Notes under the pieces: model-generated
The model's input: the letters and a program-made list of their open reading frames with translations, nothing else
What the model was told of the DNA's origin: nothing
Database searches by the model: none
Position numbers and translations under genes: made by a program
From: Octopus sinensis
Taxonomy: Eukaryota
DNA: 64,000 nucleotides
Assembly (NCBI RefSeq): GCF_006345805.1
Contig: NC_042997.1
Location: 142,538,001-142,602,000, forward strand
Direction: 5' to 3'
In this document: piece after piece, positions 18,417 to 64,000 of the stretch
Layout of the letters: each line of letters opens with the position of its first letter
How positions within the stretch are numbered: the stretch's first letter is position 1

Positions 18417-18418
18417 CT

Positions 18419-18508
<90 letters not shown>

Positions 18509-18518
18509 CTCACTCTCT
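18417..18518. repeat. (CT)n microsatellite
   Basis: Long CT run with few interruptions. Confidence 0.98.
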
Positions 18519-26565: not shown

Positions 26566-27206
26566 ATCCCATTCTTATAAAACCGGTCAAGGCTAGCAAC
26601 AAGGACATCTCAGTGTAAAACAGTACTTCAGTTATAAGTACTTGTTCAATAAGCACAGAAAAATGCATGTAAAATGAACAAACAGAACAAATACATAAAC
26701 AAAACTTTTTACAGATGATGTATCTTGAATGTGAATCCAGCTGTGAATAGCTAGCTTGTTATAATATAGGGTTGAAGATCCCTTGTATAGAAAAAAAAAT
26801 GTGAAAAACCACCTGTGGGTCTCAAAGACATATCTGTAATCCAGACATTCATGATACTATTACACTAAACTGACTCATTAACTGTCAGTTGTTCACATTA
26901 AGTGTTTTATTCTAAAATGGATGGTTGAGAGTCAGTGAGTCACTTTTAATGATATTATGAGTATCTGGGTTACTATAGGCATGTGATTCTGGTCCCATGG
27001 GTTTCCCCTAGATTTTTCATTCAAAGAGTTTTTAGCTATGTATTATGAGATTTTGTGTTATGAGCTTTTATTTATAGCTGAATTTGCATTCAAAATACAT
27101 CATTTAAAGAAGACTTATTTACATATTTCTTAATACTATTATTTTCCCATTCTAATTATAAACATTCTAAATATAAACTTTCTAAACATAAACATACACA
27201 ATATAG

Positions 27207-27590
27207 TCACAGGAGTAGCTGTGTGGTAACAAACTTGCTTACCAACCACATGGTTCCAGGTTCAGTCCCACGGCATAGCACCTCAGGCAAGTGTCTTCTA
27301 CTATAACTTCAGGCCGACAAAAACCTTGTATGTGGATTTGCTAGACAGAAACTGAAAGAAGCCCATCGTTTGTGTGTTTGTATAATTGTATCTGTTTTTG
27401 TCCACCCATCATCGCTTGACAACCAATGTTGGTGTATTTATGTCCCCATAACTTAGCAGTGTGGCAAAAGAGACCGATAGAATAAATACTAGGCTTACAA
27501 AGAATATGTCCCGGGGTCAATTTGCTCAACTAAAAAGGTGGTGCTCAAGCATGGCCATAGTCAAATGACTGAAACAAGTAAAAGAAAAGA
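27207..27590 (+). mobile_element. SINE family B, near full length
   Basis: CAGGAGTAGCTGTGTGGTAA head through GTCAAATGACTGAAACAAGTAAAAG tail. Confidence 0.9.
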
Positions 27591-28078
27591 ATAAAATATA
27601 TACATTGAATTTTATAGTGTTGTAATCTAAGTGAAAGGGGACTGAGCTTGTATTTAATATGAACCTATGAAGAAAGAACTATTTCAGGAATATGAAAAGT
27701 TGTGCTCATGTAGTTTCTTTGAGTTAATGCAAAATGAAGCCGGCAAATTTGGATGACTTTTTGAAACTTCAAAAATGAGTACACAAATTAATATTTGAAT
27801 TAAGCACCAAAGCTGTTTTTCATAATATGTAGAGATGGTCAACAAATATTCTGCATTAAATTCATATTTTTGTTGAAAACGTGATTTCATGGAAAGTTCA
27901 CTGGAAACAGTAAAGTTGTATCCTATAGCCAAGGAAATTTACATGGAAGAAAATTACTTCTTATAAATGATTGCTGCATGGAAGTGTGTTTTGTTTTTAT
28001 ATTTGGTTTGCAATATTCTTGAGATGAACTTGTTTGTTGAAACAGATTTGATTGCATCATGGGAGGGTCATTATGCCA

Positions 28079-28396
28079 ATAATAAACACATGCACTGGCA
28101 CATTTTCACTTCTTTATTATTAGTCTTGGTTAATCTATTTAACCAATTAACTAGTTAATTGTTTGATGAATTATTTGGTTAATCAATTAGTTGGTTGTGT
28201 TTGGCGATGTCCTTCCTTCACCATTTGCAACCACTTTAATGACATGCCTTCCAGTGAGAGCTTCATGTCTTTGGCAAACATATCTGACTGCTTGATTAAC
28301 TTAATGATTAATCAAATAATCTGTTAGTTGGTTAAAAAGCTAACAAATCTATGAATAATAAAGAAGTGAAATTGAATCAGTGCATGTGTTTATTAT
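28079..28396 (+). ncRNA. Long hairpin (fold-back) element, ~125-nt arms and 67-nt loop
   Basis: Perfect 19-bp (28079-28097/28378-28396) and 18-bp (28104-28121/28354-28371) helices plus a gapless 47-bp inner stem (28159-28205/28273-28319) with 35 Watson-Crick, 7 G:U and 5 mismatched pairs. The inverted repeat is certain; RNA function is inferred. Confidence 0.6.
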
Positions 28397-28976
28397 AAGT
28401 CTTTTGTAAATAACATTTAGTTAGTATAATTTGTCTTTGGAATAGTACAGATGATTCTGTTTTATGAAGATTGTGTAAGCTAAAGCAATTATTTTCAAGA
28501 ATGAAAAGTTAATGACATTCATAATCACTAATTCTTGATGTTCTATCAATTTTTAATTTTGGAGATTACAACAACTCTCCAATTGAGAATTATAAGCTTT
28601 CACATCTGGTATTCATGATAGAGGTGCCATCTTACTTTTTATTTATGTTTATATTTAATATTTTAGTCTTAGGATCTTTTGGCACTTTTGTATATAAATT
28701 CCATTCTAATATTAACTGATTCTTCGTATTTTCTGTAAAATAATTTATTGTTGTAAATATGGCCATGCGATTGCTGAATTGTTTAACTTATGGTTCATAC
28801 ATCAGACGTTCAGCTTTCAGCTGTAGAAACCATACCAAAACAGACACTAGAGCATGATCCAATTAAACTATTCCACCCATGCCAGCATGGAGCATGGATG
28901 TTAAATGATGATGATTTCAAACAATTTGCCAGATATTAACTGATGATGTGAGTTAAGTAATTATCTGTCAGCTACC

Positions 28977-28979
<3 letters not shown>

Positions 28980-29040
<61 letters not shown>

Positions 29041-29044
29041 TTCC

Positions 29045-29089
<45 letters not shown>

Positions 29090-29090
29090 A
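28980..29090. repeat. (CT)n-(TA)n compound microsatellite
   Basis: Direct reading. Confidence 0.98.
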
Positions 29091-29094
29091 TATC

Positions 29095-29580
29095 ATTGCT
29101 GTGGGCAGTGCCACCTGACTGACTTCTATACCGGTGGCACATAAAATGCACCATCTGAATGTGGTCAATTCCAGTGCCTGCGGACTAGCTCCCATGCCAG
29201 TGGCATGTAAAAATCACAATCCAAACAAGGTCGATGCCAGGTCCACCTGACTGACTCCTGTACTGGTGGCATGTTAAAAAGCACCATCCAAACGTGGTTG
29301 ATACCAGTGCCTCCCAACTGGCTCCCATGCTGGTGGCACATAAAAAGCACTATATGAACATGATTGATGTCAGGGCCACCTGACTGGCTTCCATACCGGT
29401 GGCATATAAAAAGCGCCCACTACACTCTTGGAGTGGTTGGTGTTAGGAAGGGCATCCAGCTATAGAAAAATTGCCAGATCAGATTGGAGCCTGGTGCAGC
29501 CACTAGCTTTCCAGACCTCAGTCAAACTGTCCAACCCATGCCAGTATGGAAAACAGACGTTAAACAGTGATGATGATGAT
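29095..29580 (+). mobile_element. SINE family C with four full 66-67-bp units
   Basis: Unit heads at 29135, 29201, 29267, 29334, 29400; standard tail; TA repeats on both sides. Confidence 0.92.
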
Positions 29581-32540: not shown

Positions 32541-32571
<31 letters not shown>

Positions 32572-33791
32572 GTGCAGTCATAAAATTGCTTTAACTGAAA
32601 GGTTTGCACAGGAGTAAATGTTGTTTTACCTGTTTGATGTGTGTGTGTGTGAGTATATATATATATATTTGTGTATAAATATACTTACATACACACACAC
32701 ACACACACACACACATAGTTTTAGAGAGCTGGGGTCAGAGTGTTGGGAAAATCTCTCATAAATCACGTATGTTCCTATGGCTAAGAGGTTTTAAAATAGT
32801 ATACAATCATTATTTAACAAATTACAGATAAACTTTCACATACTAATATTGGGTCAAGACCACTATTTTGTTTAAGAAGATGAATTTTTTGATTCATAGA
32901 TAATTTAAGGCTAACTAAGGTAAGAAATGTTTTGAAGGCACTTCTAACAATTACACCAGTACAATTATTTTGTACTTTTACAATAATTCTATAACTTTTA
33001 AGGAGTATTTCTAAGTGAAAACAATTTCAATTATCAGATTTTACGATAAAGTTGCCAAAAGGAAATATGTAAAGGAAGAAAGCAGAGGTACTTTTTTATT
33101 TAACCACTTATATTGTGAGTTTTTTTTATTTTATTATTTATTCATATTATGTTTTTAGCTCTTGCAAAAGATTAGTATATCTTATTCATCATAATGGGGG
33201 ATTTTTTGACACATTTACCACTAAAATGATTGATAAGCTATCCATTTATTAGTGTTGATAATGACTAGCAGTTACTTTTAAAGATATGAGAGCAGATATA
33301 TGAAATATTTTGAAGATATTTTTCTTTATACAGATTTCTCTTGTATGGAACACAGACGTTAAATGATGATGATGATGATGATGATGATGTATTTAATTTA
33401 TGTAATACCTGTGCCAGAGCAAATTCATCTAGTTCTATTAACAGAGAAAAATTTTATATTAAACTCAGTACACACAAGCAAAACAGCATTAATAAAACTA
33501 CCCTCTATTTATCATTCTAAACGTGTATACACCATTAGAAGACATGAAGCTGTGAAATTGTCTGAGATAAATTCATGTTAAATACACAATATACATTGGA
33601 GTAAAACAAATGGTGTCACTGCAATTGATTCACAAGATTGATGGGTTTATGTTTGCCTTTCTTGAGGCATGTCAATGCTTTGCACTCCATTGTTACCTAC
33701 TTAAATTAATTAAATTTGTGCTTCAATATATGAAATGCATCTGCCATTGGAACATATGTGATTTATGAGGGATTTTCCCAACACTCTATAG

Positions 33792-41548: not shown

Positions 41549-41633
<85 letters not shown>

Positions 41634-41660
41634 TATATATATATATATATGTATATATGT
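41549..41660. repeat. (TA)n microsatellite
   Basis: Direct reading. Confidence 0.98.
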
Positions 41661-42334
41661 TATATATGATATATATGTATATGGATATTTGTTTTATTCT
41701 CTCTTTCAAAAGAAACAGATTTCTTCAGAATATCCAAGTTTCCCTCTTTTTTTTTCCTGATATTTTTTTTTATTTCTTTGTTTAGATTAGATGATAAGAT
41801 ATCGTATCATTATTGGCTATATCACTCATGTTAAAAATACAAAAATAAATAGAAAGTGCTGATGTCTTTCGTTTCTTAAATTAGATATCACAGTATTTCA
41901 TTAAAGAGGATTTCTAGTTAAATGTTTGTAGTTGTTATTGATTTTGGCTAACATTCCTGATAGATACAATACATGCTTGCCAAAACTTAGCATCTAGATT
42001 AGCATAATAAAAAAATATCTTTTTTTTTTTCAATAGATGCTAATTATTGAGTTTTATATCAGTGAAGTATGTTTAATATCCTATGTATTTGAGTTAATTG
42101 CCACTTCTGTTGATCAAATAAAAAAAAATCCCTCTCTTCCTCTTTTATTCTTTTACTGGTATCAGTCATTGTACTGAACTCATGCTGGGCCAACACCTTC
42201 AAAGGTTCGGTTGATCTTATCAAATCCAGCATTTATTCCAATGTAATGGTTATTTTATCAATCTTTGTGTGTTGAGCCACTGAGTGACAAATCGTAAAAG
42301 GATACAACTTAAGCATTACACTGGTTTTTAGACC

Positions 42335-46522: not shown

Positions 46523-47193
46523 TATATATATATATATTATATATATACACATACATATACTGTTGTGTCTGGGGAGAGTCATTTTCTTTTTGTGCCTTAT
46601 AATGTGACACACTCACCAGTAAAATTTCCACTTATTTCTTATTTTTATTTTCCTAAAAAAATTTTTTCGTTGCGTCTTGCAACCTTTTCAATAGTCTTGA
46701 CTCATAAAGAATCTTGTAAAACCAAATCCAAAAACGAAATATATACATATATGCATGTATATACACACACACACACACACACATATATACATACATACAT
46801 GTATATATACATACACACACATATTTACACACACACATACATAAATACATGCATACACGTGCACACACACACACACATATATACATACTATAGCCTGATG
46901 CCCTTCCTAACGCCAACAATTCCAATAGTGTAATGGCTGTTTTTTATGTGCCATTTACATGACTCTGGCAGTGGTCATGACTACAAGTTACATGGCACTC
47001 ATGAAATCATAGTTATGGCCATAAAAACACTCATTACACTCTCAGTGGGATTGGCATTAAGAAGGGCATCCAGCCATAGAAACCATGCCAAATCAGACTG
47101 GAACCTGGTGCAGCTCTCCATTTTACCAGTTCCAGACAAACTATTTAACCCATGCTAACATGGAAAGCGGATGATGATGCATGCGCATGCACG

Positions 47194-49020: not shown

Positions 49021-49227
49021 ACAGGCTTCTTTCAGTTTTGGTCTACCAAATCAACTCATGTATATCATATATATGTATGTGGTGAAGCAATTTTGCTAAA
49101 CCCTAATTGTAATTATGTTTATAATTATAATAATTTTTGTATAAATTTACTGATTATGGTTCTTTTAACATACCGGACTACTTGGTAAGATTATTAATTA
49201 TAAATTGATTAATTAATTTTACCCTTT

Positions 49228-49307
<80 letters not shown>

Positions 49308-56044: not shown

Positions 56045-56251
56045 CTCTCTTTTACTTGTTTCAGTCATTTGACTGTGGCCATGCTGGAGCACCACCTTTA
56101 GTCAAGCAAATTGACTCCAGGACTTATTCTTTGTAAGCCTAGTACTTATTCTATCCGTCTCTTTTGCCGAACCGCTAAATTACGGGGACATAAACACACC
56201 AGCATCGGTTGTCAAGTGATGTTAAGGGGACAAACACAGACACACAAACAT

Positions 56252-56331
<80 letters not shown>

Positions 56332-56510
56332 TACACGTATATACGACGGGCTTCTTTCAGTTTCCGTCGACCAAATCCACTCACAAGGCTTTGGTCAATC
56401 TGAGGCTATAGTAGAAGACACTTGCCCAAGGTGCCACGCAGTGGGACTGAACCCAGAACCATATGGTTTGTAAGCAAGCTACTTAACACACAGCCACTTC
56501 TATGCCTATA
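56045..56510 (-). mobile_element. SINE family B, well-conserved full-length copy with expanded internal (TA)n
   Basis: All B blocks present, CpGs retained. Confidence 0.95.
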
Positions 56511-58632: not shown

Positions 58633-59262
58633 CCATGCGCCTAGAATAAGTACCGGACATAAAGAACAAAATAAATACTGGGGTGGATTTGTTCAACTAA
58701 AACTGTTCAAGGCAGTGCCTTGGCATGGCTGCAATCCAATGAGTGAAACAGGCGAAAGATAAAAGATACACAGATACACTTCAGTTTGAATAATTATCTT
58801 ATTTGCAGCATAAATTCTATAAGAAAATGGAGTGTTGATATTTAAGGTGACCTAGAACTCAACAACTGCCAGGATAGGCTGAATATGAGTAGAGAAAAAT
58901 AACCAGGAATGCATGCAACATAGATTATATGGCTTCTATTTAAGGCAGGAGGAAATGTTTGTCCATCAATCCTGTGCGCCTCATTGATTTGAAATTTATA
59001 CTGTATGGGACCACTTGATATTTGATTTATAGAGAACAATAGATGAGCTATTTAAAGCTGCATAAGTAGTTAGGAAGTACAAAGGAGTTAGTAATAGAGC
59101 ATCTGACAAACATTATGAACTGCAGAGTTTTAGCATTTGATCAATCTATAAATATAACGTTGATTTTCTTATGCCTTTTTCTCTTATCCTCTCTCTTTTA
59201 TTATATTGTCATTGTTATTATTGCATATTTATCTGCTATCTGTGTGTGTGTATTTATAATAC

Positions 59263-59265
<3 letters not shown>

Positions 59266-59343
<78 letters not shown>

Positions 59344-59610: not shown

Positions 59611-59674
<64 letters not shown>

Positions 59675-59896
59675 TGAAGTGTATAGTATTATGTAATCAT
59701 TATGGTTAAGGCCAATCTCTCCAATCGGTTTTGAATTAGGGATTCAACAGGATGCTAGATAACCCTAAGTGTGAAATACATTGGTGAGAGTGACCATAAT
59801 AGATATATAATACACTGTACACTTCGATTAATTTTCCCACTCTTTTAACAAATATAAGAGTGCATATTTTTTCTGACTTATGGATTCTCAGATGAA

Positions 59897-59931
<35 letters not shown>

Positions 59932-59941
59932 ACACACCACA

Positions 59942-60020
<79 letters not shown>
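59266..60020. repeat. Microsatellite cluster: (CT)n about 59266-59327, (TA)n about 59611-59670, (CA)n about 59898-60005
   Basis: Direct reading. Confidence 0.97.
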
Positions 60021-63497: not shown

Positions 63498-63548
<51 letters not shown>

Positions 63549-63556
63549 TGTGTGTG
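63497..63556. repeat. (TG)n microsatellite
   Basis: Direct reading. Confidence 0.98.
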
Positions 63557-64000
63557 TTTTGCTGTTGTTTGAAATGATATACTTTAATTCTACTATGATT
63601 CACTGACGAGGATACTGGCTCAACCAATATTATAATATTATTGCTAACCCAAATTTCATCATTGGTTTTAATCATTTCACTTCACTTTTATTGCTAATTC
63701 CGCCAGGAAAATATAGTTGCTAAACTCCCACCACATAGAAACGATCTGAGAAAGTGATAGGAAATTTTCCTCTTGTACACATCCAAGAAAATACTATGAC
63801 ATCATTGGAACATGTGGCTGTAAATAAATATGCTAATGAGAGGGAGGGAGGGGAGAGAGAGAGAGAGTAAGTGTATGGACATGAATCTCTATTTATAATC
63901 AGCATTGGCTTTGTTATTTTGTCTCTATTGTTATTCATCTTAGCAAGCAATTGTTCATATAGTAAAGGTAATGTTATTTTTTGTTGTTGTTTTTTTCTCT

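What the first reader, a model, noticed from the sequence alone, without database searches (positions are those of the whole stretch)
28079..28396. 318-nt hairpin with one-sided G:U bias: candidate structured RNA
Seen: two perfect outer helices (19 and 18 bp) and a gapless 47-bp inner stem with 35 Watson-Crick pairs, 7 G:U and 5 mismatches. All 7 transition-type differences in the inner stem are G:U on the + strand and none is A-C (1 in 128 for this direction if unbiased), and the G lies on either arm (4 left, 3 right). The 67-nt loop is larger than in a typical pre-miRNA. No TSD or second copy was seen in the window. A TGCATG (Rbfox motif) lies in the outer stem. Inference: a hairpin RNA for endo-siRNAs, an ADAR substrate or a splicing-regulatory stem. 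Transcription-associated A>G and C>T asymmetry in an old fold-back element could give the same bias; either reading points to + strand transcription.
Basis: partly seen in the sequence, partly recalled or inferred. Interest (0 to 1): 0.78.

Follow-up and report, generated by a model that had tools for sequence, protein, structure and literature searches.

The report
Decayed fold-back transposon copy, not RNA gene
The 318-nt hairpin is real, but it is the self-complementary core of one old, partly truncated copy of a short fold-back transposon present in roughly a thousand or more copies in this 2.7-Gb genome, and neither its pairing nor its G:U excess goes beyond what neutral decay of such a copy gives.

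Summary
The RNA fold is -117 kcal/mol (z = -12.5).

The hairpin is one member of a dispersed repeat.
- An 18-mer from its stem occurs 857 times in the genome (control 2).
- A 35-mer from the family terminus occurs 550 times (control 0).
- Complete copies carry roughly 200-nt inverted arms and flanking target-site duplications of about 6-12 bp.
The right arm is cut off at 28396.

There is no sign that pairing is maintained. The window copy's arms match each other at 0.82. They match the opposite arms of unrelated copies at 0.78 on average, up to 0.84.

The 7:0 G:U bias depends on where the stem is cut. The next pair outward is A·C. Wider counts give 10:2 and 14:5. Other copies are more skewed, in both directions. 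Against the family consensus, the whole copy has 12:10 (or 8:8) G:U-making versus A·C-making transitions. Several G:U pairs sit at decayed CpG sites.

Verdict: an ordinary, neutrally decaying MITE-like element. + strand transcription is not supported. Low interest.

The parts
27989..28396 (.). Whole repeat copy: a 408-bp fold-back (MITE-like) element, about 90% identical to the family majority consensus, with its right end truncated.
   Evidence: Extended copies from other loci match window 27984-28399. Identity to consensus is 89.5% or 91.2%.
27989..28006 (+). Outer ('t16') family terminus. It reads TTTTGTTTTTATATTTGG here; the family form is TTTCGTTTTTGTATTTGG.
   Evidence: The adjoining 35-mer occurs 550 times in the genome at up to 2 mismatches, control 0.
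27989..28078 (+). Outer part of the left arm.
   Evidence: reference positions q6-428 match this copy. In other copies the right arm continues outward past the equivalent of 28396.
28079..28205 (+). Paired part of the left arm. It includes the 19-bp and 18-bp perfect helices and the left side of the 47-bp stem (28158-28204).
28206..28272 (+). Loop, which is the family's internal unique segment and is conserved among copies.
   Evidence: Alignments.
28273..28396 (+). Right arm, truncated at its outer end. It includes 28274-28320, 28354-28371 and 28378-28396.
28381..28386 (+). TGCATG hexamer. It is part of the family consensus (…CCAGTGCATGTGTTTATTAT), so it is inherited with the repeat.
   Evidence: and the consensus.

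Best explanation
Window 27989-28396 is one old copy of a non-autonomous fold-back transposable element of the MITE kind. The family has roughly 200-nt inverted arms around a loop of about 60 nt.

Inferred mechanism: the element was inserted by a transposase supplied in trans, which duplicated a short stretch of target DNA, about 8 bp. Since insertion it has decayed neutrally to about 10% divergence from the family consensus. It has also lost the outer 30-85 nt of its right arm.

The hairpin is simply the two arms that remain. The G:U pairs are mostly C>T changes, several of them at decayed CpG sites. Their one-sidedness is sampling noise plus the choice of stem boundary.

Shown: repeat membership, copy number, termini, family TSDs, the lack of extra pairing and the lack of strand asymmetry. 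Inferred: cut-and-paste DNA transposition and the superfamily. No transposase partner was found.
For: Copy number.
- The 318-nt query gave 93 matches over the 40 scored places, out of 1409 first-look candidates. Full-length copies are 69-73% identical.
- The stem 18-mer at up to 1 mismatch has 857 genome hits against 2 for the control.
- The terminal 35-mer at up to 2 mismatches has 550 hits against 0.
- With about 10% per-site decay, my arithmetic puts this at about 2000 arms.

Architecture.
- 19 of 25 complete elements carry one 't16' and one 't70' terminus.

Target-site duplications.
- Flanking direct repeats score a mean of 3.24 against 0.69 for permuted partners; no permutation out of 5000 reached the observed mean.
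- Examples: TTCATTTA on both sides; ACTCTGGGCA/ACTCTAGGCA; TATTTTACTAAA on both sides; TTTTAAG on both sides.

Neutral decay.
- Identity to consensus is 89.5-91.2%, typical of the family range of 87-95%.
- Transitions to transversions are about 1:1 (22:21).
- Arm-to-arm identity within the window copy is 0.817. The mean between copies is 0.776 (sd 0.042). The window arms against other copies' opposite arms average 0.784, with a maximum of 0.839.

G:U excess.
- Family pileups show C/T and G/A near 50:50 at adjacent positions under several G:U pairs: 28176-77/28301-02, 28160-61/28317-18 and 28196-97/28281-82. This is the CpG-decay signature.
- G:U to A·C over 38 fold-back copies is 387:411. Single copies range from 7:30 to 17:6.

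Other searches.
- Rfam finds nothing at E up to 1 in 27000-29500.
- No stop-to-stop ORF of 110 aa or more overlaps the element.
Against: - No autonomous partner with a transposase was found.
- Recovered TSD lengths vary from 6 to about 14 bp. This is looser than expected for a single cut-and-paste superfamily.
- This copy itself has no significant TSD: AAGTGTG against AAGTCTT, 5 of 7.
- Within the inner left arm (28154-28206) the polarised transitions are 8 A>G or C>T against 0 of the opposite kind. In the rest of the copy they are 0:7, with one more opposite-kind change (28288 T>C) on the inner right arm. This is a post-hoc cluster that I cannot fully explain. Part of it is mis-polarisation at polymorphic or CpG sites and alignment slippage in the AATC-rich arm.
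- Raw G:U to A·C counts across copies are overdispersed (chi2 78 on 38 df), although the consensus-polarised counts are not.
Confidence: 0.86

Rival explanations
1. The copy has been exapted as a structured RNA. Transcribed from the + strand, it would form a long duplex of about 125 bp that serves as an ADAR substrate, an hpRNA or a splicing-regulatory stem. Selection would tolerate G:U but purge A·C.
For: - The duplex is long and stable (-117 kcal/mol), with 19-bp and 18-bp perfect runs.
- There is a local excess of G:U-making transitions in the inner stem.
- Octopus shows exceptionally strong hyper-editing and a high fraction of loci able to form long dsRNA. Palindromic repeats can self-fold and be edited (PMC5625713).
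Against: - The arms pair no better within the copy than between unrelated copies.
- The paralogue alignment gives a positive (penalty) covariation term, +1.44.
- A·C pairs lie directly outside the chosen stem.
- Whole-copy transitions are balanced, 12:10 or 8:8.
- The - strand folds almost as well (-108.4).
- A survey of molluscs that included O. bimaculoides found no dedicated endo-siRNA pathway (PMC12479628).
- Any duplex-forming ability is shared by all family members, so it is not a property of this locus.
Confidence: 0.04
2. The family spreads through RNA, as a SINE-like retroposon copied by a LINE enzyme, not by cut-and-paste DNA transposition. The hairpin would then be part of the retroposed unit.
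For: - Recovered TSDs vary in length: 6, 7, 8, 9, 10 and 12-14 bp.
- Element ends are T-rich at the 5' side and A-rich at the 3' side (…CAACAAAAT, …AAACGAAA).
- Many copies lack part of one arm.
Against: - Both termini are discrete and fall into two fixed types, t16 and t70, with no variable-length A tail.
- The termini form an inverted repeat with arms of about 200 nt, which is the hallmark of DNA elements.
- Rfam, which includes tRNA, 5S and 7SL models, finds no such head in the copy at E up to 1.
- Both loop orientations relative to the t16 end occur (L003 against L006).
Confidence: 0.08
3. The hairpin is a local, single-copy inverted duplication, not part of any repeat family.
For: Only one copy lies in the 64-kb window.
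Against: Hundreds of dispersed matches occur on all large scaffolds, with shared termini and TSDs.
Confidence: 0.01

Closest known systems
MITEs with long terminal inverted repeats, also called fold-back-type non-autonomous DNA transposons. Examples from my own knowledge: Drosophila Foldback and Galileo-like elements, and long-TIR MITEs derived from hAT, Mutator or P elements.
   Same: Short (about 400-500 bp) and non-coding. High copy number. The arms make up most of the element and fold into one long hairpin. Short direct target duplications flank complete copies. There are many truncated or solo-arm remnants.
   Different: The superfamily is unresolved. No transposase partner was found. The termini (TTTCGTTTTTGTAT… and ATTTTGTTGTATC…) do not match any terminal motif I can recall. 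Most complete copies are asymmetric, with one outer and one inner terminus. Recovered TSD lengths scatter around 8 bp and are not fixed.
Palindromic Harbinger repeat of Xenopus tropicalis, and inverted Alu pairs in human, as ADAR hyper-editing substrates (PMC5625713).
   Same: A repeat that can form long, nearly perfect intramolecular dsRNA whenever it lies inside a transcript.
   Different: Neither transcription nor editing of this family or this copy was tested here. This is a resemblance in potential only.
hpRNA / endo-siRNA hairpin loci of Drosophila (from my own knowledge).
   Same: A long inverted repeat with a loop of tens of nucleotides.
   Different: Those loci are single or low copy and show conserved pairing and phased 21-nt products. 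This is one of roughly a thousand or more decaying repeat copies. A mollusc survey found no dedicated endo-siRNA pathway (PMC12479628).

Membership tests
MITE / fold-back non-autonomous DNA transposon | Many dispersed copies in the genome | tested here: met
   93 matches over the 40 scored places, out of 1409 first-look candidates. The 18-mer has 857 hits against 2 for the control. The 35-mer has 550 hits against 0.
MITE / fold-back non-autonomous DNA transposon | Terminal inverted repeats shared by copies | tested here: met
   Arms of about 200 nt are aligned across copies, with discrete t16 and t70 termini.
MITE / fold-back non-autonomous DNA transposon | Target-site duplication flanking complete copies | tested here: met
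   In 25 complete elements the flank-repeat score averages 3.24 against a null of 0.69; no permutation out of 5000 reached the observed mean. Clear cases are 7-12 bp.
MITE / fold-back non-autonomous DNA transposon | Target-site duplication at the window copy itself | tested here: not met
   The right arm is truncated at 28396. The flanks AAGTGTG and AAGTCTT match at 5 of 7, which is not significant (sequence).
MITE / fold-back non-autonomous DNA transposon | Small size and no coding capacity | tested here: met
   The copy is 408 bp. Complete copies are about 260-730 bp. No ORF of 110 aa or more overlaps it.
MITE / fold-back non-autonomous DNA transposon | Autonomous relative with the same termini that encodes a transposase | tested here: inconclusive
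   No longer shared internal sequence was found among 141 fetched loci. The genome was not searched exhaustively.
Specific DNA-transposon superfamily (hAT 8 bp, P 7-8 bp, Mutator/Foldback 9-11 bp, Tc1/mariner TA) | Fixed TSD length or sequence and characteristic terminal bases | tested here: inconclusive
   Recovered TSDs are 6-14 bp with a mode near 8. TA is enriched just outside the termini (39 of 147). No consistent 2-3 bp TSD emerged.
SINE / LINE-mobilised retroposon | Pol III-type head (tRNA, 5S or 7SL) and a variable A-rich or simple-repeat tail | tested here: not met
   Rfam has no match at E up to 1 over 27000-29500. The termini are discrete, with no variable tail.
Curated structured RNA family (Rfam), including pre-miRNA | Match to a covariance model, or a hairpin of about 60-70 nt for pre-miRNA | tested here: not met
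   0 Rfam matches. The hairpin is 318 nt with a 67-nt loop.
Functional structured RNA in general | Pairing maintained beyond neutral expectation (compensatory change) | tested here: not met
   Arm identity is 0.817 within the copy and 0.776 ± 0.042 between copies. The RNAalifold covariation term is +1.44, and only the outer helices are recovered. Orthologues were not available.
ADAR substrate / hpRNA locus | Transcription of the hairpin, plus A-to-I editing or Dicer products | not testable with these tools
   No RNA-seq or small-RNA data are at hand. Literature only: PMC5625713 and PMC12479628.

The most novel reading that the evidence does not exclude
This particular copy, or a subset of the family lying inside + strand transcripts, has been co-opted as an intramolecular dsRNA element. 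It might act as an ADAR-recruiting or editing-sponge stem. Selection would tolerate G:U and remove A·C in the inner stem, which would explain the local 8:0 cluster of A>G and C>T changes at 28154-28206.
Probability: 0.04. Interest if true: 0.5.

Novelty: new member of a known kind. Interest (0 to 1): 0.1.

Why it matters
For the scan, this is a negative result. A striking hairpin with an apparent RNA-like G:U signature turns out to be an ordinary decayed transposon copy. The G:U 'signature' comes from boundary choice, small numbers and CpG decay.

The family itself is of modest interest. It comprises roughly a thousand or more self-complementary repeats of 300-500 bp in a cephalopod genome, and each can form more than 100 bp of dsRNA when transcribed. 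That is the kind of substrate proposed to underlie the very high hyper-editing signal reported for octopus (PMC5625713). This is a property of the family, it was not tested here, and it does not make this locus special.

Tried and rejected
1. Rfam at E up to 1 over 27000-29500 found nothing.
2. Pfam on the ten longest window ORFs, to find a host gene or a transposase, found nothing. Gene context and transcription strand stay unknown.
3. A repeat of about 385 bp lies next to several short arms. I suspected it was the internal part of a parent element. It is an unrelated and far more abundant repeat, 88-92% identical, with more than 5449 candidate places. I dropped it.
4. I fetched the 18 copies with a perfect 35-nt terminus, plus two with one mismatch, hoping for young or autonomous copies. 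They are as diverged and as heterogeneous as the rest.
5. A fixed-offset scan for 2-10 bp TSDs found no single consistent setting. A TA TSD, suggested by flank composition, was not confirmed. Flexible scoring against permuted partners did show TSDs.
6. I suspected a recurrent third terminus at the window's right end. It was not real: BLAST had broken the alignments early, and the arms continue in those copies.
7. A fuzzy-regex motif scan timed out. Two stringent terminus scans found only one complete copy.
8. RNAalifold on the MAFFT alignment of 14 paralogues recovers only the outer helices, because the inner arms are not aligned in register. It is a weak test.
9. A literature check of the assembly's identity found nothing. 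My recollection that the size, 2.72 Gb in 13,516 scaffolds, fits a published Octopus sinensis assembly is unverified.

Full report
**1. The observation**

- A gapless comparison from the two ends gives 19 perfect pairs (28079-28097 with 28378-28396).
- A small internal loop follows. It contains one G:U, one A·C and one other mismatch.
- Two further pairs and one mismatch come next, then 18 perfect pairs (28104-28121 with 28354-28371).
- The inner gapless stem 28158-28204/28274-28320 has 35 Watson-Crick pairs, 7 G:U, 5 other mismatches and no A·C.
- The repeat finder reports the same two arm pairs.
- As RNA the + strand folds at -117 kcal/mol. Shuffles average -58.8 ± 4.7, so z = -12.5. The - strand folds at -108.4, z = -11.4.
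- TGCATG is at 28381-28386.

The object is real and far from random sequence.

**2. It is one copy of a dispersed repeat**

A search of the window's own 2.72-Gb assembly with the 318 nt returned 93 matches. They fall over the 40 places that were scored, out of 1409 first-look candidates. Fourteen are full-length copies at 69-73% identity. Many more are single-arm matches at 75-83%.

An 18-mer from the outer stem (AATAAACACATGCACTGG), allowing one mismatch, occurs 857 times against 2 for the reversed control. A 35-mer from the family terminus, allowing two mismatches, occurs 550 times against 0. With about 10% per-site decay, both counts correspond to roughly 2000 arms. That figure is my arithmetic from those two counts. 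The copies lie on all large scaffolds.

Only one copy is in the window.

**3. The element is larger than the finding**

I aligned the full-length copies with their flanks.

In the window the left arm is complete. It starts at 27989 with the family terminus, read here as TTTTGTTTTTATATTTGG. The right arm stops at 28396, where other copies continue with …TGGCATAATGACCC….

The family has two discrete terminus types:
- an outer one, 't16' (TTTCGTTTTTGTATTTGG…);
- an inner one, 't70' (ATTTTGTTGTATCTTGGGAGGG…).

Their first dozen bases are alike. Of 25 complete elements, 19 carry one terminus of each type. Solo arms, variable loops and internal deletions are common.

**4. Target-site duplications exist in the family**

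For the 25 complete elements I scored direct repeats between the last 20 nt of the left flank and the first 20 nt of the right flank. I compared the scores with those of permuted partners. The observed mean is 3.24 against 0.69, and none of 5000 permutations reached it. An earlier set of 15 elements gave the same answer.

Clear cases:
- TTCATTTA on both sides (8 bp);
- ACTCTGGGCA/ACTCTAGGCA (10 bp);
- TATTTTACTAAA on both sides (12 bp, extendable to about 14);
- TTTTAAG on both sides (7 bp);
- ATTAAAATT/ATGAAAATT (9 bp).

A fixed 2-3 bp TSD was not supported. The window copy has no significant TSD, as expected if its right end was lost after insertion.

**5. No evidence that pairing is maintained**

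In the 14 full-length copies I compared 125-nt left arms with the reverse complement of the right arms.
- Within copies the mean identity is 0.789. For the window copy it is 0.817.
- Between different copies the mean is 0.776 (sd 0.042).
- The window's arms against other copies' opposite arms average 0.784, with a maximum of 0.839.

The two arms at this locus are therefore no more complementary than two arms drawn from unrelated insertions. That is what independent neutral decay from a near-palindromic master predicts. At 0.9 identity to consensus per arm, the expected arm-to-arm identity is 0.9 × 0.9 ≈ 0.81.

RNAalifold on the paralogue alignment recovers only the outer helices. Its covariation term is +1.44, a penalty. 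The few both-sides changes, such as A:U to U:A at alignment columns 25/356, are shared by several copies. They look like subfamily variants of the master and not like repairs specific to this locus.

The perfect 19-bp and 18-bp helices coincide with the best-conserved blocks of the family (invariant columns).

**6. The G:U bias**

(a) The 7:0 count depends on where the stem is cut. The next pair outward, 28157/28321, is A·C, and the outer internal loop has another. The 55-bp repeat has 9:1. Adding the outer stem gives 10:2 (my two-sided binomial p = 0.039). A full self-alignment gives 14:5 (p = 0.064).

(b) Other fold-back copies are more skewed, in both directions: 7:30, 5:17, 2:12, 4:16, 17:6 and 13:4. 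The pooled count over 38 copies is 387:411.

(c) I polarised the window copy against a pileup of about 100 homologous arms. This gave 12 A>G or C>T changes against 10 T>C or G>A, with 22 transitions and 21 transversions. At positions with at least 60% consensus the split is 8:8. Across 37 copies this ratio shows no overdispersion (chi2 30.9, 37 df, p 0.75). A transcription-linked asymmetry on the + strand is therefore not supported.

(d) The pileups show that several G:U pairs sit where the family is split about 50:50 between C and T at one position, and between G and A at the next. The sites are 28176-77 with 28301-02, 28160-61 with 28317-18, and 28196-97 with 28281-82. This is the footprint of ancestral CpG sites that have decayed. 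In a palindrome, a + strand C>T at such a site yields exactly a G:U pair.

(e) A residue remains. In the inner left arm, 28154-28206, the well-polarised transitions are 8 of the G:U-making kind and none of the other. Outside the inner stem they are 0:7, and the inner right arm holds one further change of the opposite kind, 28288 T>C. This is a post-hoc cluster. It is partly an artefact of majority-rule polarisation at polymorphic sites and of slippage in the AATC-rich arm. I record it as unexplained but weak.

**7. What kind of element**

The following point to a non-autonomous fold-back DNA transposon of the MITE kind: small size, no ORF, long inverted arms, discrete termini, TSDs, thousands of arms, and many decayed fragments.

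The TSD range, with a mode near 8 bp, is that of hAT, P or Mutator/Foldback-type elements and not of TA or TTAA families. The lengths scatter, and I found no transposase-bearing relative, so the superfamily is open.

A retroposon origin is a minor rival. In its favour are the variable TSD lengths and the A-rich 3' ends. Against it are the fixed inverted termini, the absence of a variable tail and the absence of a Pol III-type head.

**8. Function**

Nothing singles out this copy. If it lies in a transcript it would form a long imperfect duplex, like every other member.

Published work reports very strong hyper-editing in octopus, an unusually high fraction of loci able to form long dsRNA, and editing of self-folding palindromic repeats in frog (PMC5625713). 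That makes the family a plausible generic ADAR substrate, but this was not tested here.

The endo-siRNA reading is weakened by a survey that found no dedicated endo-siRNA pathway in molluscs, including O. bimaculoides (PMC12479628).

Gene context could not be established. Ten long ORFs in the window have no Pfam match, and no annotation or cephalopod relatives are available in these tools.

**9. Verdict**

The interpretation as a dedicated structured RNA is not supported. The fallback, an old fold-back element, is right, but without the inferred + strand transcription. This is an ordinary decayed repeat copy of low interest.

Noticed in passing
L101:120-502 (G000:C6:18655408-18655790) and L111-L121: An unrelated repeat of about 385 bp. 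Its copies are 88-92% identical, there are more than 5449 first-look candidate places, and several copies can lie within 3 kb. It is much younger and more abundant than the fold-back family, and probably the genome's dominant SINE-like repeat.
   Followed up: partly
L003:1463-1920 versus L006:1468-1942: The loop segment occurs in both orientations relative to the outer ('t16') terminus. This suggests flip/flop isomers produced by recombination between the long arms.
   Followed up: no
window 28154-28206: Eight consensus-polarised transitions in 53 nt are all A>G or C>T on the + strand. The seven transitions outside the inner stem are all T>C or G>A, as is the one on the inner right arm (28288). 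The cluster was found post hoc and is partly explained by CpG or polymorphic sites and by alignment slippage.
   Followed up: partly
window 28981-29071; also 18418-18510, 32541-32574, 59258-59335: CT/GA dinucleotide microsatellites. The nearest lies about 600 bp downstream of the hairpin. One family copy (L006) carries a (CT)n tract inside its loop.
   Followed up: no
window 41549-41689, 49227-49305, 56230-56343, 59611-59675, 59899-60006, 63498-63570: Several TA and GT microsatellite tracts. They produced most of the spurious BLAST hits when family copies were compared with the window together with their flanks.
   Followed up: no
window 46703-46746: A 40-45-nt match at 82-88% identity to the outer right-hand part or flank of the extended copies L003 and L008. 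It may be a small fragment of the same or a related repeat, or it may be chance.
   Followed up: no
window 1-64000: AT skew is negative (T over A on the + strand) in most 2-kb bins, while GC skew is slightly negative overall. This mixed signal does not indicate a transcription strand.
   Followed up: no
L013 and L014 (G000:C4:96578197 and 96544227): Two identical arm-plus-flank matches lie 34 kb apart on the same scaffold. This indicates a recent segmental duplication that contains a family copy.
   Followed up: no
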